DNA of 63,352 bases, the filler included, from Octopus bimaculoides (taxonomy: Eukaryota), in the NCBI RefSeq assembly GCF_001194135.2. It is 4 parts of 3 records of this genome, joined end to end, with 100 filler letters (N's around TTAATTAATTAA, not from the genome) between each part and the next. Parts side by side here need not be neighbours in the genome. Positions count along the whole stretch, not along the records: positions 21,369 to 49,518 come from NC_068985.1; 3 more parts are not named here. The stretch is one strand, 5' to 3'. A model generated the notes under the pieces. It did not search any database. It was not told where the DNA came from and worked only from the letters and a program-made list of their open reading frames with translations. Below, one piece after another: positions 8,736 through 41,406 of this stretch; within the stretch, counting starts at the first letter, position 1; each line of letters begins with the position of its first letter. Position numbers and translations under genes: made by a program.

Positions 8736-10094
8736 TTGCTTTGCATGAAGCTTCATTACAAAGTGTCGAAAAAAATATCATTGCTATTTTGTTAAACTGT
8801 CGTATGCCCAAATTTGGCCAAATGCGTTTTTTTTTTCTTTCAATATTAAAAATTTTGCTTCCAATAGCCGGTTCTTTTTGTCAAACTATCGTATCTCCAG
8901 CTGCTTCAGATGCCAAGATATGAAAATTGTCAAAGTGTACTACAACAGTTTAGCTTTTTTCAAAAGTGTAGTAAGTCCCACATATCACAGTTTTGCGAAA
9001 ATATTTCTTATAGAAAATATCATACATGCATAGAATTACGATTTTATGCACCCAACAAAGTATTATTGTTAAGCTGAAACTGTTGTTAATGTAAAAAGAA
9101 ATGGAATGATGAAACCATTTTTTTTCGTTTTCTTAAAAGCANNNNNNNNNNNNNNNNNNNNNNNNNNNNNNNNNNNNNNNNNNNNNNNNNNNNNNNNNNN
9201 NNNNNNNNNNNNNNNNNNNNNNNNNNNNNNNNNNNNNNNNNNNNNNNNNNNNNNNNNNNNNNNNNNNNNNNNNNNNNNNNNNNNNNNNNNNNNNNNNNNN
9301 NNNNNNNNNNNNNNNNNNNNNNNNNNNNNNNNNNNNNNNNNNNNNNNNNNNNNNNNNNNNNNNNNNNNNNNNNNNNNNNNNNNNNNNNNNNNNNNNNNNN
9401 NNNNNNNNNNNNNNNNNNNNNNNNNNNNNNNNNNNNNNNNNNNNNNNNNNNNNNNNNNNNNNNNNNNNNNNNNNNNNNNNNNNNNNNNNNNNNNNNNNNN
9501 NNNNNNNNNNNNNNNNNNNNNNNNNNNNNNNNNNNNNNNNNNNNNNNNNNNNNNNNNNNNNNNNNNNNNNNNNNNNNNNNNNNNNNNNNNNNNNNNNNNN
9601 NNNNNNNNNNNNNNNNNNNNNNNNNNNNNNNNNNNNNNNNNNNNNNNNNNNNNNNNNNNNNNNNNNNNNNNNNNNNNNNNNNNNNNNNNNNNNNNNNNNN
9701 NNNNNNNNNNNNNNNNNNNNNNNNNNNNNNNNNNNNNNNNNNNNNNNNNNNNNNNNNNNNNNNNNNNNNNNNNNNNNNNNNNNNNNNNNNNNNNNNNNNN
9801 NNNNNNNNNNNNNNNNNNNNNNNNNNNNNNNNNNNNNNNNNNNNNNNNNNNNNNNNNNNNNNNNNNNNNNNNNNNNNNNNNNNNNNNNNNNNNNNNNNNN
9901 NNNNNNNNNNNNNNNNNNNNNNNNNNNNNNNNNNNNNNNNNNNNNNNNNNNNNNNNNNNNNNNNNNNNNNNNNNNNNNNNNNNNNNNNNNNNNNNNNNNN
10001 NNNNNNNNNNNNNNNNNNNNNNNNNNNNNNNNNNNNNNNNNNNNNNNNNNNNNNNNNNNNNNNNNNNNNNNNNNNNNNNNNNNNNNNNNNNNNN

Positions 10095-10130
<36 letters not shown>

Positions 10131-11266
10131 TGCATGGATTTATATATGTGTGTGTCTAATACATGCAGTTCGTCTTTATTTGTTTAAATAGTAAATATAA
10201 GTGTTAGTAAATAAAAGTCTAGTTTCTGCAAATCTTCGTACATTAGAATAATAGACTTCAGGAAATGGGTTTTGGTCTCTTTAAGACTATACGTGTGTGT
10301 GTGTGTGTGCGTGTGTGTGTGTNNNNNNNNNNNNNNNNNNNNNNNNNNNNNNNNNNNNNNNNNNNNNNNNNNNNNNNNNNNNNNNNNNNNNNNNNNNNNN
10401 NNNNNNNNNNNNNNNNNNNNNNNNNNNNNNNNNNNNNNNNNNNNNNNNNNNNNNNNNNNNNNNNNNNNNNNNNNNNNNNNNNNNNNNNNNNNNNNNNNNN
10501 NNNNNNNNNNNNNNNNNNNNNNNNNNNNNNNNNNNNNNNNNNNNNNNNNNNNNNNNNNNNNNNNNNNNNNNNNNNNNNNNNNNNNNNNNNNNNNNNNNNN
10601 NNNNNNNNNNNNNNNNNNNNNNNNNNNNNNNNNNNNNNNNNNNNNNNNNNNNNNNNNNNNNNNNNNNNNNNNNNNNNNNNNNNNNNNNNNNNNNNNNNNN
10701 NNNNNNNNNNNNNNNNNNNNNNNNNNNNNNNNNNNNNNNNNNNNNNNNNNNNNNNNNNNNNNNNNNNNNNNNNNNNNNNNNNNNNNNNNNNNNNNNNNNN
10801 NNNNNNNNNNNNNNNNNNNNNNNNNNNNNNNNNNNNNNNNNNNNNNNNNNNNNNNNNNNNNNNNNNNNNNNNNNNNNNNNNNNNNNNNNNNNNNNNNNNN
10901 NNNNNNNNNNNNNNNNNNNNNNNNNNNNNNNNNNNNNNNNNNNNNNNNNNNNNNNNNNNNNNNNNNNNNNNNNNNNNNNNNNNNNNNNNNNNNNNNNNNN
11001 NNNNNNNNNNNNNNNNNNNNNNNNNNNNNNNNNNNNNNNNNNNNNNNNNNNNNNNNNNNNNNNNNNNNNNNNNNNNNNNNNNNNNNNNNNNNNNNNNNNN
11101 NNNNNNNNNNNNNNNNNNNNNNNNNNNNNNNNNNNNNNNNNNNNNNNNNNNNNNNNNNNNNNNNNNNNNNNNNNNNNNNNNNNNNNNNNNNNNNNNNNNN
11201 NNNNNNNNNNNNNNNNNNNNNNNNNNNNNNNNNNNNNNNNNNNNNNNNNNNNNNNNNNNNNNNNNN

Positions 11267-11298
<32 letters not shown>

Positions 11299-11342
11299 AT
11301 ATATACACACACACACTTACACACACACGCACACAAATATAA

Positions 11343-11511
11343 TATACGACGGGATTCTTTCAGTTTCTGTCAACCGAATCCATGCACAATCATTTGGTCG
11401 GCCGGAGGCTAAAGCAGAAGACACTTGTCCACGGTGCCACGCAGTAGGACTGAACCTGGAACCATGTGGTCGGGAAGCAAGTTCCTTACCACACAGCCAC
11501 GCCTGCGCCTA
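11343..11511 (-). mobile_element. SINE family A, 5' half; microsatellite side runs into a gap
   Basis: Homologous to 4780-4945. Confidence 0.8.
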
Positions 11512-11624
11512 TGTATGCATGTATGTATGTATGCATGTATGTATGTATGCATGTGTGTATGCGTGTGTATGTTTGTGTGTGTATGCGCGTGTGTGTGCGT
11601 GTGTGAGCGTATACCTTCAGGCTT

Positions 11625-11830
11625 TGGGCTTCGGCCATGCTAGAGCACCGCCTTTAAGGGCTTAGTCGAACAAGTAGAAATTGGTACTTATAATTTCCTT
11701 TAGAGTTTGTTACTTATTCTATCGGTCTCTATTTGCTGAACTGCTAAGTTGCGGGAAGGTAAACAACCATCACCAGACATCAAACAGTCGTGGTGGGGGA
11801 CCAAGCACAAATGCATAGACACACTCACAC
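11625..11830 (-). mobile_element. SINE family A, 3' half
   Basis: GGCCATGCTAGAGCACCGCC..CTAAGTTGCGGG..ACCAAGCACAAA homologous to 4525-4700. Confidence 0.7.
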
Positions 11831-12919
11831 GTGTGTGTGTGTGTATGTGTGAATGTGTTTTGTATATATATATAAATAAATATATATATATAGTGAAGAC
11901 ATGTGGCTTAGTGGTTAGGGCAGTTCAATTCCTGGTTCAAAGGGTCAACCTTGTCACACACTGTNNNNNNNNNNNNNNNNNNNNNNNNNNNNNNNNNNNN
12001 NNNNNNNNNNNNNNNNNNNNNNNNNNNNNNNNNNNNNNNNNNNNNNNNNNNNNNNNNNNNNNNNNNNNNNNNNNNNNNNNNNNNNNNNNNNNNNNNNNNN
12101 NNNNNNNNNNNNNNNNNNNNNNNNNNNNNNNNNNNNNNNNNNNNNNNNNNNNNNNNNNNNNNNNNNNNNNNNNNNNNNNNNNNNNNNNNNNNNNNNNNNN
12201 NNNNNNNNNNNNNNNNNNNNNNNNNNNNNNNNNNNNNNNNNNNNNNNNNNNNNNNNNNNNNNNNNNNNNNNNNNNNNNNNNNNNNNNNNNNNNNNNNNNN
12301 NNNNNNNNNNNNNNNNNNNNNNNNNNNNNNNNNNNNNNNNNNNNNNNNNNNNNNNNNNNNNNNNNNNNNNNNNNNNNNNNNNNNNNNNNNNNNNNNNNNN
12401 NNNNNNNNNNNNNNNNNNNNNNNNNNNNNNNNNNNNNNNNNNNNNNNNNNNNNNNNNNNNNNNNNNNNNNNNNNNNNNNNNNNNNNNNNNNNNNNNNNNN
12501 NNNNNNNNNNNNNNNNNNNNNNNNNNNNNNNNNNNNNNNNNNNNNNNNNNNNNNNNNNNNNNNNNNNNNNNNNNNNNNNNNNNNNNNNNNNNNNNNNNNN
12601 NNNNNNNNNNNNNNNNNNNNNNNNNNNNNNNNNNNNNNNNNNNNNNNNNNNNNNNNNNNNNNNNNNNNNNNNNNNNNNNNNNNNNNNNNNNNNNNNNNNN
12701 NNNNNNNNNNNNNNNNNNNNNNNNNNNNNNNNNNNNNNNNNNNNNNNNNNNNNNNNNNNNNNNNNNNNNNNNNNNNNNNNNNNNNNNNNNNNNNNNNNNN
12801 NNNNNNNNNNNNNNNNNNNNNNNNNNNNNNNNNNNNNNNNNNNNNNNNNNNNNNNNNNNNNNNNNNNNNNNNNNNNNNNNNNNNNNNNNNNNNNNNNNNN
12901 NNNNNNNNNNNNNNNNNGT

Positions 12920-12968
<49 letters not shown>

Positions 12969-14504
12969 TATAAACATGTGTACGTATGCATACATATGTA
13001 AATACGTAGATATATATTCATGCATATGTACATAAATGTATATATATATATGTATGAAAATATAAGTATATGTGTATATATATGCATGTATATGTATATA
13101 TATATCTATTTGTGTATGCATGTGTATATGTATTTATGTATGTATATATGTATACAAGTTCATTCACTTATTAATGTTATCTACATATTTTCGATAGAAA
13201 CTCGACCCAGCATTTAATGAATATTCAAGTAATGTGTTCGTGGTTGGTTAATGGTTTTGAGGTGGAGCTGAAGAAGGAACGATGACTCTCACAATATGCA
13301 TATACACCCATTGCCTGTTTTTCTATTTTTGATCGCATTTTTTACATAGATGTGTTCGTATATGAAACGTCATAACATTCAGTGTTGGCTTTAATTTCTA
13401 TGGAGAATCGGTAGAGATAACTTTAAAATATGATTGAATAGCACTGCTAAGACAGGTAGGACGCAATATAAACATATAAACCTTTGATTTACTTGTAGCA
13501 TAATATCGTTGCATAATTGAAATACTGCGTCTCTACCAACANNNNNNNNNNNNNNNNNNNNNNNNNNNNNNNNNNNNNNNNNNNNNNNNNNNNNNNNNNN
13601 NNNNNNNNNNNNNNNNNNNNNNNNNNNNNNNNNNNNNNNNNAAAAAAAAAAAAGTATCAAGGTCATATAGGTTCGAATAAATTCACACTAAATTTATTAG
13701 ATCGAACTAGCTGAACGCTATTTATCCGGTATTTTAGATAGTTTTAAATGTATGGTCTTCACTTTGAAAATGAAGATCGACACCAAATCAAGTGCAAAAT
13801 GTTTAAAAACAAACAGGATAGCCAATATGTGTGGGTTGCAATTGTCACATCATAAGTAAATTGTAGACGGTTTTCTGTAAACATGGAAGTAGTCTATTGC
13901 TCATTTCGCCATACGAACCGTGTTGGCTTCATCTCATAAGATATACATCGTTATTTGTAACTGTGAACAGGAACTACTTATAAACAATTGTACATTTTTC
14001 ACCAAAAAGCAAATATGAGATTTTCTCTCGTGGCATCTGCCGCCGTATAGTTTGTTCCAACAGAACACCCACGTTTAAGCGAAGATAAACATCACCTCTC
14101 GGTGTTAAGACTACCTCTGTTGCTAATAAATATTTTTTTAACAAGTTCACTGGCTAATCCCGACATCAGCGTCTGTTCTGACATTGTCAATCTATATATC
14201 GCTAATGAATCGCTGCCATCTCCAGCGGTCGAGCGTCTATCATAGACGAGATCAAGGAAGGTCGAAATGACGTGATCTGGTGGTCTCGGCGCTGGAGATG
14301 GCAGGAATTTATCTCCCCGCTAGCGATGTAAACAGTTGTGAATTTGGCACCAAAAGCCAATATGAGAGTTTCTCTCATGGTAACAACTGCAGTACGATTT
14401 GTTCTAAGAGAACATCTTCTATTAAGTGGCGATACATGTTACCTCTCGACATATGTATCTGCTTTTACCACTAATAAATATTTCTGGTTTGATAGATACG
14501 TATA

Positions 14505-21368: not shown

Positions 21369-23091
21369 TGGATCACTGCCATTTACGGCGGCATCAAATC
21401 CATAGTCCACATAAACGGTTACCTGAGGGTGCCGTTTAAGCTCGAGCGCTCGGTTCATCAAGGGTGCTCCTGTCTCCGCTTCTGTATGTACTGGCTCTTG
21501 AGCCATTGCTGCGGAGGCTGGAGTGTTTGGGGGGCATCCCCAATGAATTGGGATGTGGTAAATCTGTTTCTGTATATGCGGATGACGTCACCATCCGATG
21601 AAGCTCAGCTACCTTGTGTAGAGGATGCAATCAAGGGATATGAGGCGGTGGCAGGGGCAAAAATTAACAAGGACAAGTCCATCGGCTTGCGGCTAGACAC
21701 CTGGAGTGGCAAGACGATAATGTCTAGTGTTGTGGAGCACTGGATGGAAGGTCCTGTTAAATTGCTTGGAATCTAGTTTGGACCGGATTCTCAGACGGAG
21801 AAGAATTGGAGTGACGTGGCAGGTAGGGTGGAGGCCCTAAAACGGACCTGGTCCGGAAGGGCGCTATCCCTGAAAGGGAGGGCAGAGGTGGTGCAGGTGT
21901 ATATTGCGTCGGTTATCACTTACCGTCTGACCGTTGTCCCTTGCTCTGATTCGCGGCTAAGCAGCTTGGAACACCTTCTATTCTGCTTTTTGTGGAGGGG
22001 AGGAAAACCGCATGTGAGGCGCTCTGTTTGCTGCCAAGAACCGCTAAAGGGTGGGTTAGGGATGCCGTGGTTAATGATGTGCAGACATGCGCTGAGGCTA
22101 AGGCACCTCTGTCTCTATCTGCATGGTGACCAGGTGTGGAATACGTTGGCAGAGAAATTCCTTCCGCGACTGGAGGAACTCAAACACAACTTCATTAAAA
22201 GACGTAACACGACTGAATGGCAAAAGGAGTGCCGACAGGCACTCGTGTTAATCCACAAGGCTGGCAGCAGGAATACCACCTCGGTATTCTATAGAGGGTT
22301 GGTAGAGTTTAAGGGGGATGACGCCCTAAGAGAAGCTCTGGGGCTCGATGAGAGCCAGCTAGCCAACCTGTTTCAAAGAACTTTCGGGCTGGGGTACCTG
22401 GATAACTACCAGAAATCCCTGACTTGGCAGTGCTATAGGAGTGCGTTACCTGTTCGAGACAAATTGTCTAGGCATGGATTGTCTTGCCACCGGCATGCTC
22501 GAGGGGCGGACAGGACGATAAAACCGTTCTGCACGCCCTTGTACAGTGCTCGGAGATTTCGGGCTTGATAATTTACGGAGAACACGTGCTATCGCATCTA
22601 GGAAGAGTATAACTGTCTGATCGAGATTGTACCGAGATTGAATCCATGATCGAGATTGTACCGCCACCCGGTCTATCAAAGAAAGGTGAGGCATGTTTTT
22701 TTTTATGCACAGTCGCAATATTGAAAGAGTGTATATGGAAAACTAGAATGAAATGAGTCGCGACGGGAACTTTCATCTCCGGCTCTGGTTTGCTATATTA
22801 CTTCAGATATCATCTGAAGTGCAAGATAAGACTGGAGAGGAGACACCTGTCATGAAGTATATTTGGAAAAAGATGGAAGGATGTGGCAAGGAAGTTGGGT
22901 ATGAATGACCCTACTTAATCTCATTCATGGTAGAAAAATATGGTGTAGCTGTTGGGCTTCATGGCTAAGGGTAAACTTGTAAAACTTATTTTTAAAACCA
23001 CTTTAAAAAGAACTCATAAACACACTATTTGTTTGCAATGTCCTGTGTTGTCCCATCTATGTGTGATATATAATTATCGTAATAATGAATC
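21369..23091 (+). mobile_element. L1/Tx1-clade LINE, 3' part of ORF2 (RT, C-terminal Zn region) plus 3' UTR; degenerate
   Basis: SVHQGC, YADDVT (frameshifted), GAKINKDKS, LSLKGRAEV, FLWRG..GGLGMP motifs typical of L1/Tx1 ORF2; stops and frameshifts; 5' end lost at a scaffold join. Confidence 0.9.
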
Positions 23092-23703
23092 ATCTCTTAG
23101 GTACATCTCATCGAAAATAGCCAAGAAGCTTGAAACATCGATGTCTCAAGATTCCTAATAGATGGCGACGCTGAAAGGACCTGGTGTTTTTACATCTTTT
23201 TATCATAGGAGAGGTTTTTCTCCACAGTGCTGCAGTGTATTTGCCTTTTAGCAGTTGAAATATGTGACAAACATATTTCAACTTACCTAATTCTGTTCGT
23301 ACATAATCACTGCTTAGCGCTAATAATTAGTTATATATATATATAAATACACACACACACACGCACACGCACACACACATACACATACACACACACGCAC
23401 ACACACACGCACACACACACACACACGCACACTTTGTAATACTTGGGGATGGTCATACGTTTTGCTAATTAAATACATACACTGTCAAAGTTTTTTCGTC
23501 ACACATTCTGTTACTTCTTCAGCGACTCTCTGTCCCATGTGTCTCCCCTTGCTTATTCTGTATGTGTGTGTGTATATATACAATATCTGCTTAAACTAGA
23601 AACCCTTAAACAAGTATTACTTTTATCAGGAGTAGAATCTCTTTGAAGAACACTCATGCAATATCTATTTTTGGTAACGCATGAGTATGTGTGTGTTTGT
23701 GTG

Positions 23704-28539: not shown

Positions 28540-28970
28540 CAAACTTTGGCACAAGGCCAGCAAATTCGGCGGCGTGGATAGGTCGATTACGTCCATCCTT
28601 GTATTCTACCGCTACTTATTTTATCGATCTCGAAAGGATGAAATACATGTCGACCTCGACGGAATTTGAGCTCAGAAGATAAGAACGGGCTAATCATTTT
28701 CTCGGGCATGCTACCGATTGTGTCTTATGTGTGTATAATATCATATGTACTTATAAGGCGGCGAGCCGGCAGATTAGTCATTACACTGGGCAAAATGATT
28801 AGTGGCAATTCGTCCGTCTATACGTTCTGAGTTCAAATACCTCCGAAGTCGACTTTGCCTTTCATCCTTTCGGGGTTGATAAAATAAGTACAAATTGAAC
28901 ACTGGGATCGATTAAAACGACCACCCCTCTTCCGAACTTGCTGGCTTTGTGCTAAAACTTGAAGCCAGTA
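28540..28970. mobile_element. Head-to-head pair of SINE family B copies
   Basis: Minus copy at about 28540-28720, plus copy at about 28755-28970. Confidence 0.8.
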
Positions 28971-30379: not shown

Positions 30380-30788
<409 letters not shown>

Positions 30789-31070
30789 CACCGCACAGGA
30801 GCATAGGAGAGCGGGTAAATGAGCATTGGAGGGAACTTAAGGAAGAGAAGAACTCATCGGTTTTATACCAGCACGCCAAGTGGGGACACGGGGCTCACTC
30901 AACAACATAGAAGTTAAAATCCTGTCCACACATAGAACAGAGAGAGAGGCAACGCTTAGACAAGTTACAGAACCTACACGCATAATAGAAGATAAACGTA
31001 GCCTAAATAGAAAACTAGAATGGAACACGAGCACACCCATCACACACCCCGACCTATAACAGAATAAGAT
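30789..31070 (+). pseudogene. Penelope-like element GIY-YIG endonuclease, C-terminal half
   Basis: RSIGERVNEH..SVLYQH..VKILS..E..LNRKLEW (one frameshift), characteristic of PLE endonucleases. Confidence 0.75.
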
Positions 31071-31411
31071 CATCATAAACTAATAATAATACGAAACTAA
31101 TACAATACACAGATAAATAAATGGAATTAAATAATTATATACATAAACAAATTAAATTAAATTAAATTAATACAAAAAGAAACAAATGAAAAAGTAAGTA
31201 GATAAAAACAAATGAAAAAGTAAGTAGATAAAAACAAATGAATAAAATAAATAAAAATAAATTAAACGAACGTGAATAAACAGGGGATTCTGATAATGCA
31301 GGTACCATACACATTCCCACATACACACTAAACATAGACACACACAGGGATATACGCATGCGCAAATAAAGATACATGCAACAGGAATACAAAATAGCAG
31401 ATCGTTAGTAA

Positions 31412-31586
<175 letters not shown>

Positions 31587-32252: not shown

Positions 32253-32441
32253 TTAATATAGATCTATGTTAGTCAATTAATTCCGATTGGTTAATGAAAT
32301 TTTGAATTATTTTGTTTACTCTATAGCGTTTGAGGGAAACATTTGTTTTAGCGGTTTTGTAAACATGCGATGTCTGTATTTGCGTATGAAAATAAATAAT
32401 AAACGTCTATGTATACATGTGTTCAAGGGTACGTAAATGTA

Positions 32442-32490
<49 letters not shown>

Positions 32491-32940
32491 TGTTGTGAAT
32501 TTATGGAAAGAAATCCCATAAAACGCATTAGTGTACACATACAGACTTGCATAAACACACGCATATATGCATATCTGCCTACTCTCGTGTATGTGCTCAT
32601 ACCCACACATGCTCATATATACATATATACATATACAGACTTACGTCCATATGCTTATACACACAGACATGTATGCGTCTATTCTTACGCACACATATAT
32701 GTACATAGATATAGGCCTACATGCATATACGTTTAAATATGTATTTACATATACTTATAGTTAATTACTTACGTATGGATACATTCACATAAGTATAAGG
32801 AAAACGAAAGTATTTTATTTAGTGTGTGTAAAAATTATTGTAATGAGGCGGGAGAATTATGTTAGTGGAAATGAATTATAAGAATTATAAGAAAGGTGTG
32901 CTTATAAGCACACACACTCACATACATACACGTATATATA
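32253..32940 (+). repeat. Dispersed AT-rich repeat; inverted relative to the copy at 36310-37010
   Basis: Collinear reverse-complement match, e.g. ATAAGTATAAGGAAAACGAAAGTATTTTATTTAGTGTGTGT. Confidence 0.85.
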
Positions 32941-33731
32941 TATNNNNNNNNNNNNNNNNNNNNNNNNNNNNNNNNNNNNNNNNNNNNNNNNNNNNNNNNN
33001 NNNNNNNNNNNNNNNNNNNNNNNNNNNNNNNNNNNNNNNNNNNNNNNNNNNNNNNNNNNNNNNNNNNNNNNNNNNNNNNNNNNNNNNNNNNNNNNNNNNN
33101 NNNNNNNNNNNNNNNNNNNNNNNNNNNNNNNNNNNNNNNNNNNNNNNNNNNNNNNNNNNNNNNNNNNNNNNNNNNNNNNNNNNNNNNNNNNNNNNNNNNN
33201 NNNNNNNNNNNNNNNNNNNNNNNNNNNNNNNNNNNNNNNNNNNNNNNNNNNNNNNNNNNNNNNNNNNNNNNNNNNNNNNNNNNNNNNNNNNNNNNNNNNN
33301 NNNNNNNNNNNNNNNNNNNNNATAATACATATACATAAAATCACAGAAGGTAAAAGTATATATTCGAATAAAATACAAGTAGAGCGGCGTATCAAAAAGT
33401 TAAATATAAACGGCTAAAATTTCAAAAACTACCAAAAAACCTAATAGACAAATATAAGATAAGTTAAAGGAAATATAAAATAAAATAAATATCCACCGAC
33501 TAAAAAAGTTTTATCAGACGATTAAAATATTTAAAAAAATCTTTTTAACTAAATATTTGAAAAAATATTTGAAAAGTCTTTTACATCCCTCATACATGTA
33601 CGTCAAAAATTTATAAGTAAACAAACTTCCACAGGTCAAATTCACATACATCTTGAAAAAAGTCTTTTACTCACTCTACACAAGTACGTCCAAAATTTCA
33701 TAGTGAGCAGACTTCACAGGTCAAATTCAAC

Positions 33732-33826
33732 ATTCATATATATCTACGGCCATTTCGGGAGCTCACCACCGCAGTTTATTTACACTAAAGTGCAACACAG
33801 TGATGACCCCGCTCATCAGGATGAAC
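33732..33826 (-). ncRNA. Candidate type I hammerhead ribozyme with intact core
   Basis: CUGAUGA 33819-33813, 13-bp imperfect stem II, GAAA 33756-33753, short stem III with palindromic GGCC loop, GUA triplet, bulged stem I; folded by hand. Confidence 0.65.
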
Positions 33827-33851: not shown

Positions 33852-35010
33852 TTCTTTATTATCCATAAGGGGCACACACAGAAAGGACAATACAATACAT
33901 GTGGGGACATATAACAAAATAATAAAATTATGATAAACATGAATGAAAAATGAAATGATATATAGAAACGTGCTACCTACTCCACCTCAGTAGCATCATT
34001 TACTTCCATCTAGATCTAGTTCATGTTGATTCCATAATGTTCTTCCAATTCCTTATTTTCAATCTCATTTGGCGCATCTCTTGTATCACAAATCACATTT
34101 CTGTATCTAACACCCTCCTTACATTCTTTAACCTCTCTCATCCGACTTTCCGGCACCAATACACTTGCGACCATATTTTCCTTTTTATCTCCTTTAATAC
34201 TAACAAATCTCACATCTCTCCATTGTGACAATTTCTCCACCAGTTTCTTATGCACACCCTTAAACAACACAAAAGGATAACACACAGCAGGGGAGTTTTG
34301 TGAATTTTTGTATGTTTGCACATCTTTTTCCGTTTTTGTATCGGTGGAGAATGGGTAGCTTTGGTATCTGCAGTGGGAGGGTGGGGTTATAAAGGTATGG
34401 GTGTGTGGATATGGGTTGGGTTGGGGTTCACTTTGACTGTTCTTCTTCCTCTGTTTTCTCCTTCCAGCCACTCTCCATACTTCTTCCTCGTCTGTTTCAC
34501 CTTTATCTTCCACCGTCTCCTCCTTCTCGGCTTTCTCCTAGGTTTGCTTGTTTTTCTTTTGACTTTTGAGGGCAGTCCGCTCTAATGTGGCCCTTTTGGC
34601 CACATTTATTGCAGCGAGGGGTTCTGCGCGCCAACCACACTTTCATCACCGTTTCTCTTACAGTCACCGTTTCTGCCAGTTTCTCCACATTTTCAGCCGA
34701 AGATTGTATCATCATATCTAGACTTTTCCCTCTCCTATTGGTTACTTCCATCTCCATAACTTGGAGCACAGCCACCTCTTTCCCACTTCCAAGAAGCACC
34801 GCAGCCACCACCCAAGCCACGTCTATATCAGGGGGAATTCCCTCCAGCCTGACCCTGGAAGTTCTTCCAAGGTATGTGGGTAAGAGGATCAACCTTTCTG
34901 TCTTCATTGCGTTCATAGAGTGTTCCTTTGCGTTTTCTTTATTTCTGAAATATATACATCAGTAGTGCCGTAACGACATCCTCTGGCAAGATTTTAGTTC
35001 TGAAACCGAT
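33852..35010 (-). mobile_element. ORF1/gag-only non-LTR element (CCHC zinc knuckle), 5' truncated, with AATAAA-containing tail
   Basis: ORF 34916-34503 contains CNKCGQKGHIRADC; continues by frameshift into ORF 34513-34016; ~165-bp UTR ends AATAAAGAA; no EN/RT sequence. Confidence 0.75.
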
Positions 35011-35189
35011 TATATATATATATATATATATATATACACGTATGCATACATACACACAAACATATGCATATACTCGTACACTCACATACTCAATTATGCA
35101 TGTTCAATTTTGTTCAGTTGTATTCGAAAAAATATATAGGAGAGAGAATAATGTTAGTGTAAAGTGTAATTTTGAAGTATACAGACGTT

Positions 35190-35425
35190 TACCTCTTCGG
35201 TACTCCATCGATTACGATGACAAGAGTTTCAGTTGATCCGATCAACGGAACAGTCTGCTCGTGAAATTACCGTGCAAGTGGCTGAGCACTCCACAGACAC
35301 GTGTATCCTTAACGTAGTTTTCGGTGGGATTCAGCGGGACACAGGGTGTGGCAAGGCTGGCCCTTTGAAACATAGGTACAACAGAAACACGAAGAAAAAG
35401 TGAGAGAAAGTTGTGATGAAATATA
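35190..35425 (-). mobile_element. SINE family C, 3' part
   Basis: Homologous to 61696-62093; interrupted by a B2 SINE. Confidence 0.8.
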
Positions 35426-36309: not shown

Positions 36310-37010
36310 ATATTTTCCCGAATGTGTGTGTGCCTATTTACATGTACAACTCTTGCATTCTTATAATTTATTTCCACTAACATAATTATCTTCCCTACCA
36401 TTATAATAATTTTTACACACACTAAATAAAATACTTTCGTTTTCCTTATACTTATGTGAATGCATGCAGTATATAAGTATATGTAAATACATATATAAAC
36501 GTATATGCATGTAGGCTTATATCTATTATGTACATATATGTGTGTCAGAATAGACGCACACATGTCTGTGTATATAAGCGTATGAGCGTAAATCTGTATA
36601 TGTATATATGTACATATGTGCATGTGTGGGTATGAGCACATATACGAGAGTGGGAAGATATGCACATATGTGTGCGTTTATGCAAGTGTGTATGTGTACA
36701 CTAATGCGAGTATGTGTTTGTAAATGTGCGTACGTTTATATATGCATATATGTATATGCATGTGTACTTGCGTATATCTGTATGTATTTCTATGTATCTG
36801 CGCGCATGGCCACACACATATATGTTTTGGTAGTGCATGTGTGCATATATGCGTATTTATGTATGTGTATATGTATGTGCACGAGGGAACATGTTTACAA
36901 AACCGTTAAAACAAATATGCTTCCCTTGAAACGCTACAGAGTAAAACGAAATAATTCAAAATTTCATAAACCATTCAGAATTAATTGACCAACATGGATC
37001 TATATTAACT
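36310..37010 (-). repeat. Dispersed AT-rich repeat, inverted copy of 32253-32940
   Basis: Reverse-complement alignment by eye. Confidence 0.85.
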
Positions 37011-37059
37011 TCTTCTTAGGGGTGATGGGTAAAAAGTGTAAACGTATATATGTATACAG

Positions 37060-37660
37060 ATGTATGAATGTGCATACGTATTAATGTGCTCGCACATATG
37101 CATATATGTGAATATATGCGTACGTATGCATAAGCGAAGACATGTGTGTGCGTATGGATGTATGCATATATGTCAGTGTCTCTGTGTATATATATGGACG
37201 TAGGATACATATATGTATGTGTGTATATTTATGCTAGCATGCTTGCATATATACACATTTTCTTAACTTTATACCTTATAAGCGTATATTACATTCTTAC
37301 CTTATCTATATTTAAATTTCCTCTATCATCTCTATTTAATTTATTCATTTATTAATTTAATTCTATTCACCTACTCTGTCTTATTTCCAATCAACCTGCA
37401 AACTCCTCGCTCGAACATAAAAATACAAATCACAGACAGTATCATTCAGTCTGCAATAATGAATCCATAAACACATATATGAAGCATCCATTGGTATATT
37501 TTTCCCTTTGAAGATATTATACTCAAGTCATATGAATTTAATATTTAATTAGTTCACTGAGTATTAATTGAAACAGCTGTAAGAGAGGATGATTGATTTG
37601 TTGTTAATAATAAACAATTATTAACTTCCCAATCTCCATTTTCTTTCTCTTCTTTTATAT
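37060..37660 (+). repeat. Dispersed repeat, direct copy of 40710-41330
   Basis: Near-identical core 37310-37650 vs 40990-41325. Confidence 0.9.
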
Positions 37661-37985: not shown

Positions 37986-39322
<1,337 letters not shown>

Positions 39323-39479
39323 TGTGTGTGTGTGTATGTGTGTGTGTGTGTGTGTGTATGTATATATATCATATGCATGTTATATATATCCTTTTATTCT
39401 ATTTCTTTCAGTCATTTGAGTGCGGCCATGTTGGAGCACCACCTTAGTCGAACAAATCCCATTCCTATCGTTACGCTTG

Positions 39480-40700
39480 ACAGTTTCAAATTTCCTCATG
39501 GCTCCTTTATATACTCTGATCCTTTCTCTATGTCTGTATCCTCAGAACTTCATGCCGTGAACGAATATTGTATGTGTCTCTTTAACTCTGAAGGGTTGCA
39601 CATGCGGGACACATTTCTCATTACTCGGATGAGGTCAGCCATCAATATATTGAATTTGGCATTATACGTGATAGCTGAGTTCCAGTGGATTAGGTATTTG
39701 GAGGCCATAGGTTTGGCATAGTGTGAATGGAGGATTTGGGTTTTACTATTCACAGTTTCCAGCCAGAGTTCTGTATGCAGTACTGGTAGTCTATGGTTAG
39801 GGTGTCTTTAATACTCTGGTGGATGGAGTTAGCTATTTGCTCGATGCCCTCCATAGTATTAGTTTCTATTTATATTTCAAGGGTACTCTCTTGTGGGGGT
39901 GCCTTTACCACTATGTTGATATCATTGAAATAGCGTGAGTACATGTTCATTAGTATGGAGATCTGTGTCAGGCGTTCTTTAAGCCTCATATCCCACCAAA
40001 CCATGAAAAAGTTGGCCACATCACCGGCGATGCTAACCCCGATGGCCGCCCCTTGATCCTGGGTGTATATTTTGTTGTTACACTTAAACGTGTAGCATTT
40101 TAGGGTAACTCCTATACTAGCTCCTATTGCATGTGCGATCATTTTCTTCACTTGATATTAGTTTTTGGAGGTCCGTATGGCTCTGGTCCATCCGCTCCAT
40201 CTCTCTATAGGGGTCTTCCTAGCTATAAATGTAATTGTAGGGGTCCACTACTTAAACGTCTACTGGGGAAAAACTTCTAAATTCATATTTGTCTAGATTT
40301 TCATTGTCATATGTCGGTCTAAGTAGGAGGCCCAGTGTTGACACTGCGAAACTCCACTCCGCTCTCGCTGATCATCTCCATGTACTTCACCGCAAAATCC
40401 ACGTTGATGGATGGGTATAGGGACACCACATCCACCGTGCTACACACTATACATCCTGTCAGGTTGCAGGTGTTGTTACAGTCTTTGAATCTGCTGAGAA
40501 CTTCCGTGCTGTCACAAAAATCTGGTGACATCTAGATTATGGAGCGTATGATCATTGAGAGGAAGTAGGAGATCTTGTAGTTGCTAGCGACATTCGCTCC
40601 GCAGACCGGTCTCGTTGGTGGTCCCGACACTGTATTGGTAGTTATTTTTTGGTCCTTGCGGAGTCCATACAGCGTCAGGATATCGTTGTTCCAGGCTTGG
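39480..40700 (-). pseudogene. Penelope-like element reverse transcriptase fragment
   Basis: LYGLRKDQK..PTRPVCG, VDVVSLYPSI, YTQDQGAAIG..AGDVAN, YSRYFND (YxDD decayed), thumb HYAKPMASKYLIH. Confidence 0.85.
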
Positions 40701-40709
40701 AACATAGAT

Positions 40710-41330
40710 ATATGTGTGAATGTGGATACGTATTAATGTGTTCGCCCATATACATATATGTACATATATGCGTATATACGTATATGCGCAGATATGTGTG
40801 TGCGTGTAGATGTATGTATATGTGTAAGTACATGTGAGGGTCTGTGTGTATATATATATATATATATGGACGTACGGATACATATATGTATGTGTATATA
40901 TTTATGCGTGCGTACTTGCATATATACAGATTTTCTTATATTTATTTATACCTTATAAATTTATATTACACTTTACCTTGTTTATATTTAAATTTCCTCT
41001 ATCATCTCTATTTAATTTATTCATTTATTACTCTAATTCTATTCACCTACTCTACCTTATTTCAATCAACCTGCAAACTCCTTGCCCGAACATAAAAATA
41101 CAAATCACAGACAGTATCATTCAGTCTGCAATAATGAATCCATAAACACATATATGAAGCATCCATTGGTATATTTTTCCCTTTGAAGATATTATACTCA
41201 AGTCATATGAATTTAATATTTAATAAGTTCACTGAGTATTAATTGAAACAGCTGTAAGAGAGGATGATTGATTTGTTGTTAATAATAAACAATTATTAGC
41301 TTCCCAATCTCCATTTTCTTTTTCTTCTTA
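40710..41330 (+). repeat. Dispersed repeat, direct copy of 37060-37660
   Basis: Alignment by eye. Confidence 0.9.
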
Positions 41331-41406
41331 TANNNNNNNNNNNNNNNNNNNNNNNNNNNNNNNNNNNNNNNNNNNNNNNNNNNNNNNNNNNNNNNNNNNN
41401 NNNNNN

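What the first reader, a model, noticed from the sequence alone, without database searches (positions are those of the whole stretch)
33732..33826. Hammerhead ribozyme with a fully intact catalytic core just downstream of a retroelement poly(A) signal
Seen on the minus strand: GTTCATC-CTGATGA-GCGGGGTCATCAC-(30 nt)-GTGGTGAGCTCCC-GAAA-T-GGCC-GTA-GAT-ATATAT-GAAT. All core nucleotides are present, G10.1-C11.1 closes stem II (11 of 13 pairs), stem III has a palindromic loop, the triplet is GUA, and stem I is 3 bp plus a 6-nt bulge plus 4 bp. Predicted cut between 33745 and 33744. It lies about 25 nt past the AATAAAGAA end of the gag-only element. Knowledge: this topology matches type I PLE/retrozyme hammerheads, where a stem I bulge contacts loop II. 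Inference: a possibly still active self-cleaving RNA that could process read-through transcripts.
Basis: partly seen in the sequence, partly recalled or inferred. Interest (0 to 1): 0.8.

Follow-up and report, generated by a model that had tools for sequence, protein, structure and literature searches.

The report
Solitary hammerhead ribozyme motif in octopus DNA
A complete but unusual hammerhead self-cleaving RNA motif sits alone among decayed jumping genes in an octopus genome; it is most likely a leftover of a ribozyme-carrying retroelement, a kind of sequence already known to be common in animal genomes.

Summary
On the minus strand, 33826->33732, all hammerhead core nucleotides are present, with G10.1-C11.1, a GUA triplet and a predicted cut between 33745 and 33744. 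Chance is unlikely: about 2-5e-5 such motifs are expected per piece, and reversed decoys of 271 kb of related DNA gave none. The piece is octopus DNA full of transposon debris. That debris includes three fragments of one Penelope-like element (PLE) family and a second PLE-type mini-hammerhead at 23526-23484.

The motif is atypical. Helix II is 12-21 bp instead of 4-8. Helix I has only 3 bp next to the core. Helix III is 2 bp plus a palindromic GGCC loop. Folding puts the hammerhead shape 12.8 kcal/mol above the optimum, and a competing hairpin covers the core. There is no second copy in the 28-kb piece, no tandem array, and no homologue in anything I could search. Covariation is therefore untested. 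Rfam finds nothing, but it also misses a bona fide PLE hammerhead used as a control.

The "gag-only element" is a frameshifted LINE-ORF1-like pseudogene, and its AATAAA is not significant.

Verdict: a genuine hammerhead-derived relic, probably weak or inactive here. It is a new member of a known kind, of modest interest.

The parts
33820..33826 (-). Helix I, 5' strand GUUCAUC
   Evidence: Sequence read. It pairs with GAU...GAAU at 33744-33732.
33813..33819 (-). Core box CUGAUGA (C3-A9)
   Evidence: This is the only CTGATGA on the minus strand of the piece.
33757..33812 (-). Helix II: a 56-nt imperfect hairpin closed by G10.1-C11.1
   Evidence: Constrained fold -20.9 kcal/mol. Free fold -22.5 kcal/mol, z = -3.68. 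Reached by 0.2-0.5% of controls.
33753..33756 (-). Core box GAAA (G12 A13 A14 A15.1)
33746..33753 (-). Helix III: A15.1-U16.1, U15.2.G16.2, loop GGCC. AUGGCCGU is self-complementary (8 bp in a dimer).
   Evidence: Sequence. The duplex of two copies is -12.5 kcal/mol.
33744..33745 (-). Predicted scissile bond: after A17 (33745), before G1.1 (33744)
   Evidence: Follows from standard hammerhead numbering applied to the sequence. Cleavage itself was not tested.
33732..33744 (-). Helix I, 3' strand GAU-AUAUAU-GAAU
   Evidence: Pair probabilities <=0.014 in the ensemble. The ATATATAT may be flanking microsatellite.
33567..33745 (-). Two tandem units of about 86-92 nt whose alignment begins at the predicted cleavage site
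   Evidence: (family D12).
34016..34916 (-). Frameshifted gag-like (LINE-ORF1-like, zf-CCHC) reading frames just upstream: 34916-34503 and 34513-34016
   Evidence: In relative L009 the homologous ORF is followed by what looks by eye like an AP-endonuclease-type LINE ORF2 (no domain search run).
33852..33860 (-).
   Evidence: AATAAA occurs 34 times on this strand in 25.7 kb, so it is not significant.
35011..35036 (.). (TA)13 tract upstream of the gag-like segment. With ATATATAT at 33743-33736 it brackets a 1.27-kb segment.
   Evidence: The interpretation as a target microsatellite is an inference.

Best explanation
This is a real but solitary and non-canonical type-I hammerhead ribozyme motif on the minus strand of an octopus genomic scaffold. 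It is most likely a relic of a hammerhead-bearing retroelement of the PLE/retrozyme world, stranded about 190 nt downstream of a frameshifted LINE-ORF1-like pseudogene in a transposon graveyard.

If transcribed and folded, the 2'-OH of A17 (33745) would attack its 3' phosphate. That would leave a 2',3'-cyclic phosphate on ...GGCCGUA and a 5'-OH on GAUAUAU....

Three features argue against activity as a monomer:
- Helix III is only A-U/U.G plus a GGCC loop.
- The core-proximal part of helix I is only 3 bp.
- A competing hairpin sequesters CUGAUGA.

Like other metazoan hammerheads with a palindromic helix III, it would need a second copy to form an 8-bp intermolecular helix III. None is nearby, so at this locus it is probably not functional.

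Shown: the sequence features, non-randomness, context, and absence of a partner copy in the assembled sequence. Inferred: origin from a PLE/retrozyme-type element, and low activity.
For: - Complete core, G10.1-C11.1, GUA triplet and three helices at the stated coordinates.
- Chance expectation about 2-5e-5 per piece. 7 forward hits against 0 decoy hits in 271 kb.
- Host is an octopus: best protein relatives are from O. bimaculoides and O. vulgaris, and DNA is 78-87% identical to O. vulgaris repeats.
- Octopus genomes carry many PLEs, including recently active ones (PMC13282606).
- One PLE family left an RT fragment at 40702-39453 (-), an EN plus tail at 30787-31422 (+), and a mini-hammerhead at 23526-23484 (-) in this same piece.
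- Most PLE hammerheads occur as single motifs from truncated copies (PMC4209133).
- A helix III of 2 bp with a palindromic tetraloop is the metazoan type-I signature (PMC4209133, PMC7229834, PMC6765202).
- Weak fold: the hammerhead shape is -16.1 against an optimum of -28.9 kcal/mol.
- No second copy in the piece.
Against: - No homologue was found anywhere, so there is no covariation and no family: viral scan 0; the metagenome scan gave only 2 chance hits in GC-rich bacterial genes; nothing in 197 kb of O. vulgaris.
- No Rfam hammerhead model matches even at E<=10 in 107 nt. The same models also miss a bona fide PLE hammerhead and the O. vulgaris PLE-tail motif.
- The motif fits neither the PLE mini-hammerhead nor the canonical retrozyme architecture. 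Helix II is 12-21 bp, there is no unpaired nucleotide after A9, and it is in neither a pseudo-LTR nor a tandem array.
- It shows no similarity to the tail of the PLE family present in the piece.
- A 378-N assembly gap begins 410 nt downstream and could hide further copies.
Confidence: 0.6

Rival explanations
1. The hammerhead is the functional 3'-end module of the 1.27-kb ORF1-only (gag-like) retroelement. The element's RNA would be trimmed at GUA|G by the ribozyme, as in PLEs, where the hammerhead sits just after the stop codon. The element would have inserted into a (TA)n microsatellite.
For: - The hammerhead starts 190 nt after the stop codon. In the intact control PLE in L005 it starts about 65 nt after the stop.
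- The segment 35010->33745 is bracketed by (TA)13 and ATATATAT.
- An O. vulgaris mini-hammerhead also sits in a short segment flanked by (TA)n.
- The downstream tandem units begin to align exactly at the predicted cleavage site, as if the element ended there.
Against: - Two relatives of the gag-like family (L009, L010) carry no hammerhead core downstream. One is an ordinary LINE ORF1 followed by an apparent ORF2.
- No upstream half-site or second copy was found.
- If the element ended at A17, the 7 pairs of helix I would have to be fortuitous (rough estimate 0.5-3%).
- (TA)n tracts are everywhere in this piece.
Confidence: 0.15
2. Chance look-alike: a stable hairpin of another origin (for example a retroelement 3' stem-loop or a small inverted repeat) that happens to be flanked by CTGATGA and GAAA.
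For: - There is a single instance, with no homologues and no Rfam match.
- Helix I and helix III get no thermodynamic support.
- The 5' strand UCAUC is also complementary to GAUGA of the core, so part of the pattern is a local palindrome.
Against: - Expected frequency is about 2-5e-5 per piece.
- Even given the hairpin, the two flanking boxes cost about 4^-11, before adding UH and helix I.
- Decoys gave 0 hits in 271 kb.
- Hammerhead-bearing PLEs are demonstrably present in this very piece.
Confidence: 0.12
3. Edge member of a tandem retrozyme-like array whose other units are lost in the assembly gap at 32944-33321. In vivo, neighbouring copies could then dimerise and cleave.
For: - An N gap of 378 lies 410 nt downstream. 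Tandem repeats often break short-read assemblies (PMC8557442).
- Short tandem units start at the cleavage site.
Against: - Neither the assembled sequence between the motif and the gap (33322-33731) nor the far side of the gap (32253-32943) resembles the hammerhead or its flanks.
- The 134 nt upstream of the hammerhead do not resemble the downstream units. There is therefore no body-ribozyme-body pattern.
Confidence: 0.05
4. Another small RNA gene on either strand: a C/D-box snoRNA-like RNA or a microRNA-like hairpin.
For: Weak matches to archaeal C/D-box families: sR7 at 11.1 bits, E 1.3-3, and sR44 at 8.7 bits. The hairpin is stable.
Against: Scores are far below the gathering thresholds (37 and 45 bits), and these are archaeal families. 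There is no D box or terminal stem in the proper place, and no microRNA family match.
Confidence: 0.03

Closest known systems
Canonical metazoan type-I hammerheads of non-LTR retrozymes / satellite repeats (newt satellite 2, axolotl, mussel, coral; PMC7229834)
   Same: Type-I topology and a full core. Helix III is 2 bp capped by a palindromic tetraloop, implying dimer-dependent or weak monomeric cleavage. The surroundings are low in GC and rich in repeats.
   Different: Those have helix I of about 6 bp and helix II of 4 bp with conserved loop-loop contacts, and they sit in 170-400-bp tandem repeats. Here helix II is 12-21 bp, helix I is 3 bp + 6-nt bulge + 4 bp, and the motif is single.
PLE mini-hammerheads in pseudo-LTRs (Cervera & de la Pena 2014, PMC4209133); control examples here are L005 8735-8785 and window 23526-23484
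   Same: An animal retroelement setting, G10.1-C11.1, a palindromic helix III region, a short helix I, and mostly dispersed single copies from truncated elements. PLE fragments lie in the same piece.
   Different: PLE mini-hammerheads have an unpaired nucleotide between A9 and G10.1, a helix II of 5-8 bp and almost no helix III, and they flank an RT-EN ORF. This motif has none of these and is not similar to the tail of the resident PLE family.
Schistosoma Sm-alpha SINE-like hammerhead elements
   Same: A dispersed type-I hammerhead in a non-autonomous retroelement.
   Different: Sm-alpha has a pol III tRNA-like promoter upstream and canonical loop-loop contacts. No tRNA-like sequence was found here.
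3'-UTR hammerheads of protein-coding genes (mammalian Clec2-type discontinuous hammerhead; recalled from the literature, not tested here)
   Same: The position is downstream of a reading frame, where cleavage would destabilise or truncate the transcript.
   Different: That one is discontinuous, with a large insertion in a different helix, and lies in intact host genes. Here the upstream frame is a frameshifted transposon ORF.

Membership tests
Hammerhead ribozyme (class) | Conserved core C3 U4 G5 A6 N7 G8 A9 / G12 A13 A14 / A15.1-U16.1 / H17 | tested here: met
   All present at 33819-33813, 33756-33753, 33746 and 33745.
Hammerhead ribozyme (class) | Three helices around the core with G10.1-C11.1 closing helix II | tested here: inconclusive
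   Helix II is strong (-20.9 kcal/mol). Helix I and helix III can be drawn, but have pair probabilities <=0.014 and 0.0003, and the full fold is 12.8 kcal/mol above the optimum.
Hammerhead ribozyme (class) | Match to curated covariance models (Rfam Hammerhead_1/3/II/HH9/HH10) | tested here: not met
   No match at gathering score or at E<=10. The test has little power here: a bona fide PLE pseudo-LTR hammerhead also fails, giving only RAGATH-1-hammerhead at 14.3 bits.
Hammerhead ribozyme (class) | Covariation in helices among homologues | not testable with these tools
   No homologue was retrievable. No octopus genome can be searched by nucleotide sequence.
Hammerhead ribozyme (class) | Site-specific Mg2+-dependent self-cleavage | not testable with these tools
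   Needs an experiment.
PLE mini-hammerhead | Located in the direct repeats (pseudo-LTRs) flanking an RT-GIY-YIG ORF | tested here: not met
   The nearest PLE coding fragments are 5.6 kb upstream (40702-39453) and 2.3 kb away on the other strand (30787-31422). The neighbour is a LINE-ORF1-like frame.
PLE mini-hammerhead | Unpaired nucleotide between A9 and G10.1; helix II about 5-8 bp; helix III absent or minimal and palindromic | tested here: not met
   G10.1 follows A9 directly and helix II is 12-21 bp. Only the palindromic helix III criterion is met (compare L005 and window 23526-23484).
Non-LTR retrozyme (canonical type-I hammerhead) | Tandem repeats of about 170-400 bp, each with a hammerhead | tested here: not met
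   The motif occurs once. The only tandem units nearby are 86-92 nt and carry no hammerhead. Caveat: an assembly gap lies 410 nt away.
Non-LTR retrozyme (canonical type-I hammerhead) | Helix I about 6 bp and helix II 4 bp with interacting loops 1 and 2; helix III 1-2 bp with a palindromic 2-4-nt loop | tested here: not met
   Helix III fits. The helix I and helix II geometry does not.
Sm-alpha-type SINE hammerhead | tRNA-like pol III promoter upstream of the ribozyme | tested here: not met
   ARAGORN finds no tRNA-like sequence in the piece.

The most novel reading that the evidence does not exclude
Cephalopods harbour an undescribed hammerhead family with a long, irregular helix II that forms the 3' terminus of ORF1-only (gag-like) non-autonomous retroelements inserted in (TA)n. 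These elements would be processed by self-cleavage and perhaps mobilised by PLE or LINE machinery. That would be a ribozyme-retroelement pairing outside PLEs and retrozymes.
Probability: 0.1. Interest if true: 0.55.

Novelty: new member of a known kind. Interest (0 to 1): 0.25.

Why it matters
Hammerheads tied to Penelope-like elements and retrozymes are already known to litter animal genomes, so one more copy changes little. I found no report of hammerheads in cephalopods in the searched literature, so documenting them would be a small addition.

The locus would matter more in two cases. The first is that the long-helix-II architecture turns out to be a conserved, active family. The second is that the ribozyme proves to be the 3' end-forming module of a gag-like retroelement. 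Either would extend the known links between self-cleaving RNAs and retrotransposons beyond PLEs, retrozymes and the HDV-like ribozymes of LINEs.

Tried and rejected
- **Rfam:** gathering and E<=10 searches found no hammerhead family. The controls show Rfam is blind to PLE hammerheads, so this negative carries little weight.
- **Viral contigs pattern scan:** 0 hits.
- **Metagenome pattern scan:** 2 hits, both fortuitous matches inside GC-rich bacterial coding sequence.
- **Exact-protein look-ups** of the window's ORFs and of P0001: not on record.
- **Sampling O. vulgaris and related contigs:** 197 kb of O. vulgaris around related PLE copies plus two ENA contigs. No sequence resembled the motif or the gag-like ORF.
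- **Is the motif the tail hammerhead of the resident PLE family?** No similarity.
- **Do gag-like relatives carry a 3' hammerhead?** A representative search, a profile search and two Logan contigs gave none. The family looks like LINE ORF1.
- **Retrozyme array hypothesis (body-ribozyme-body):** the upstream flank does not resemble the downstream units.
- **Pfam on stop-masked six-frame fragments of the piece:** nothing at E<=0.01-0.05.
- **tRNA-derived SINE promoter:** none.
- **Bacterial promoter/terminator scan:** irrelevant for a eukaryote and empty.
- **snoRNA reading:** rejected, because the scores are far below threshold.

Full report
**Observation.** The minus strand from 33826 to 33732 reads GTTCATC CTGATGA GCGGGGTCATCAC-(30 nt)-GTGGTGAGCTCCC GAAA TGGCCGT A GATATATATGAAT. 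Every conserved hammerhead position is present:
- C3-A9 at 33819-33813.
- G12 A13 A14 A15.1 at 33756-33753.
- U16.1 at 33746 and A17 at 33745.

G10.1-C11.1 closes helix II, and the triplet is GUA. The predicted scissile bond lies between 33745 and 33744. AATAAAGAA ends 25 nt before the motif. Helix II has 11 of 13 ungapped pairs, or 12 bp with two single-nucleotide bulges, and it continues to about 21 bp in the minimum-energy fold. It is the only CTGATGA on that strand of the piece.

**Chance.** I used a descriptor requiring CTGATGA, G10.1 and C11.1, GAAA, a U-H within 13 nt, and at least 3 contiguous helix I pairs. It produced 4 candidates in 400 simulated piece-equivalents, or 0.01 per piece, and none of those had a stable helix II. 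A G...C-closed 56-mer folding to -20.9 kcal/mol or better occurs in 0.2% of shuffles and 0.5% of genomic 56-mers, most of the latter being microsatellite palindromes. The joint expectation is about 2-5e-5 per piece, so only a few per octopus-sized genome. I then applied the descriptor (with CTGANGA) to 271 kb of real sequence: this piece, four O. vulgaris loci, and four further contigs (two ENA, two Logan) carrying relatives of the piece's PLE or gag-like proteins, organism not established. It hit 7 cores forward and none in reversed decoys. The forward hits are this motif, a second one in the piece, one in O. vulgaris, and the two pseudo-LTRs of an intact PLE. The motif is therefore very unlikely to be fortuitous.

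**Fold.** Only helix II has thermodynamic support (z = -3.68). The full hammerhead secondary structure scores -16.1 kcal/mol against -28.9 for the optimum. In that optimum, GUUCAU pairs with AUGAGC and buries the core. Helix I pairs have probabilities of 0.0003-0.014 and helix III pairs 0.0003. Removing the AUAUAU bulge gives a contiguous 7-bp helix I that appears in the minimum-energy fold. Two copies could form an 8-bp intermolecular helix III (AUGGCCGU with itself, -12.5 kcal/mol). However, the predicted best dimer uses the 5' palindrome instead. The helix II loop lies 12-21 bp from the core, whereas the helix I bulge lies 3 bp from it.

**Database models.** No Rfam family reaches its gathering score in the piece. 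No hammerhead family appears at E<=10 in 251-nt or 107-nt searches. This negative is weak. The mini-hammerhead found in both 99.6%-identical pseudo-LTRs of an intact PLE (L005) also fails, giving only RAGATH-1-hammerhead at 14.3 bits, E 2.9. The O. vulgaris PLE-tail motif fails as well.

**Context.** The piece is a draft eukaryotic scaffold with 2,439 N and dense microsatellites. The reading frames just upstream on the same strand, 34916-34503 and 34513-34016, carry a CCHC knuckle. They match an O. bimaculoides CCHC protein at 50% identity. The second frame continues the homology after a frameshift, by eye against P0001 and P0034, so this is a decayed copy. The family is large, with 258 representatives at E<=1e-3. 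In a Logan contig the homologous ORF is followed by what looks by eye like an AP-endonuclease-type LINE ORF2 (no domain search was run on it). The 'gag' is therefore LINE-ORF1-like. AATAAA occurs 34 times on this strand in 25.7 kb, so the 'poly(A) signal' carries no weight.

[quoted passage not shown] I read the GIY-YIG endonuclease by eye in the C-terminus of P0005; Pfam gave no hit for P0005. The fragments are:
- RT at 40702-39453 (-).
- EN plus tail at 30787-31422 (+). Both are about 80% identical to tandem copies on O. vulgaris chromosome OX597820.1.
- A PLE-type mini-hammerhead at 23526-23484 (-): GTCG CTGAAGA A GTAAC..GTGAC GAAA AAAC TT|TGAC. It aligns with the O. vulgaris tail motif.

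Octopus genomes are known to hold many PLEs, some recently active (PMC13282606).

**Relatives.** No second copy or degenerate copy of the motif or its flanks exists in the piece. A viral-contig scan found nothing. The single metagenome scan returned two fortuitous matches in GC-rich bacterial genes. Nothing similar occurs in 197 kb of O. vulgaris or in the other fetched contigs. The motif is unrelated to the tail of the resident PLE family. The two retrievable relatives of the gag-like family have no hammerhead core downstream.

**Boundaries.** Two tandem units of 86-92 nt follow the motif. Their alignment starts exactly at the predicted cleavage site, with AGAT.TAT. in both and nothing alignable upstream. 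Both units keep GAU-N6-GAAU. The 134 nt upstream of the hammerhead do not resemble these units, so this is not a body-ribozyme-body retrozyme array. The 1.27-kb segment from 35010 to 33745 is bracketed by (TA)13 and ATATATAT. An O. vulgaris mini-hammerhead likewise sits in a short segment between long (TA)n tracts, and PLEs favour microsatellite targets (PMC8557442). This allows a reading in which the ribozyme is the 3' terminus of the gag-like element. However, (TA)n is ubiquitous here, and helix I would then be partly fortuitous.

**Mechanism and rivals.** The best-supported reading is a genuine hammerhead-derived sequence from the PLE/retrozyme world. It persists as a solitary, probably weak or inactive relic. 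If folded, it would cut after A33745 by the standard 2'-OH transesterification. Like other metazoan hammerheads with a palindromic helix III, it would need a partner copy (PMC4209133, PMC6765202, PMC7229834), and none is present. The rivals and my confidence in each are:
- A functional 3'-end module of the ORF1-only element: 0.15.
- A chance look-alike built on an unrelated hairpin: 0.12.
- An array edge hidden by the 378-N gap 410 nt away: 0.05.
- Another small RNA: 0.03.

**Comparison with known systems.** The motif shares helix III design and type-I topology with canonical metazoan hammerheads, and its genomic company with PLE mini-hammerheads. It fails the defining architecture and location of both. 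Helix II is 12-21 bp, there is no unpaired nucleotide after A9, it is not in a pseudo-LTR, it is not tandem, and it has no loop-loop geometry. I therefore file it under the hammerhead class only, not under either subfamily.

**Verdict.** This is a new member of a known kind, with an unusual long helix II. Interest is modest (0.25) unless genome-wide searches reveal a conserved family or a link to the gag-like element.

Noticed in passing
window 23484-23526 (minus strand): A second hammerhead-like motif of PLE mini type: GTCG CTGAAGA A GTAACAGAATGTGTGAC GAAA AAAC TT|TGAC. It aligns with the tail motif of O. vulgaris PLE copies (L003 12934-12970).
   Followed up: partly
window 39453-40702 (minus) and 30787-31422 (plus): Fragments of one Penelope-like element family: RT on the minus strand, and GIY-YIG endonuclease end plus 3' tail on the plus strand. 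They are about 80% identical to tandem copies on O. vulgaris chromosome OX597820.1. The plus-strand tail breaks off at an AC microsatellite and an N gap, just where its hammerhead would be expected.
   Followed up: yes
window 33567-33745 (minus strand): Two tandem units of 86-92 nt whose homology begins exactly at the predicted hammerhead cleavage site. Both keep GAU-N6-GAAU. This is either a coincidence or a trace of RNA-end-defined insertion; it remains unexplained.
   Followed up: partly
window 35011-35036 and 33736-33743: (TA)13 and ATATATAT bracket the 1.27-kb gag-like-plus-hammerhead segment. They are a possible microsatellite target of an insertion.
   Followed up: no
L003 12925-12975 and about 13300-13340 (O. 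vulgaris OX597820.1): The PLE tail carries the motif CTGATGC G GTCAC..GTGAC GAAA in two inverted copies either side of a (TA)n tract. Position 9 is C instead of the conserved A in both, whereas the window's copy at 23522 keeps A.
   Followed up: partly
L005 8420-8920 and 11740-12240 (ENA ERZ25042219 ctg13028l): An apparently intact PLE (ORFs 8838-11999) with 500-bp pseudo-LTRs at 99.6% identity. Each holds a textbook mini-hammerhead (ACTCA CTGAGGA G GTTGCC GGAG GGCAAC GAAA AT TC|TGAGT). No Rfam hammerhead model detects it at a useful score.
   Followed up: yes
L008 about 28700-28760 (minus), O. vulgaris OX597823.1: A mini-hammerhead, CTGACGA A GAGC TCC GCTC GAAA CG TT|AAAC, inside a segment of about 250 bp flanked on both sides by long (TA)n tracts.
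   Followed up: no
window 37053-37657 vs 40705-41332; 32524-32698 vs 36534-36708: Direct repeats (82-97% identical, 3.67 kb apart) that run into assembly gaps, and a 175-nt inverted repeat pair (90%) bracketing the region that holds the hammerhead. They are probably copies of an unclassified TA/CA-rich repeat.
   Followed up: no
L009 18-683 and about 1480-2245 (Logan SRR11869394): A relative of the gag-like ORF is followed by a frame that looks by eye like a LINE AP-endonuclease ORF2 start. This suggests the gag-like family is LINE ORF1. No Pfam confirmation was run on the ORF2 part.
   Followed up: partly
window 35199-35400: A SINE-like repeat, 77-87% identical to copies in O. vulgaris loci L007 and L008.
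   Followed up: no
window 21369-22565 (plus) and about 38000-39150 (plus): By eye, a LINE-type reverse transcriptase fragment (..YADD..) runs off the piece's left edge, and there is a Tc1/mariner-like transposase remnant. Neither reached Pfam thresholds in stop-masked fragments.
   Followed up: partly
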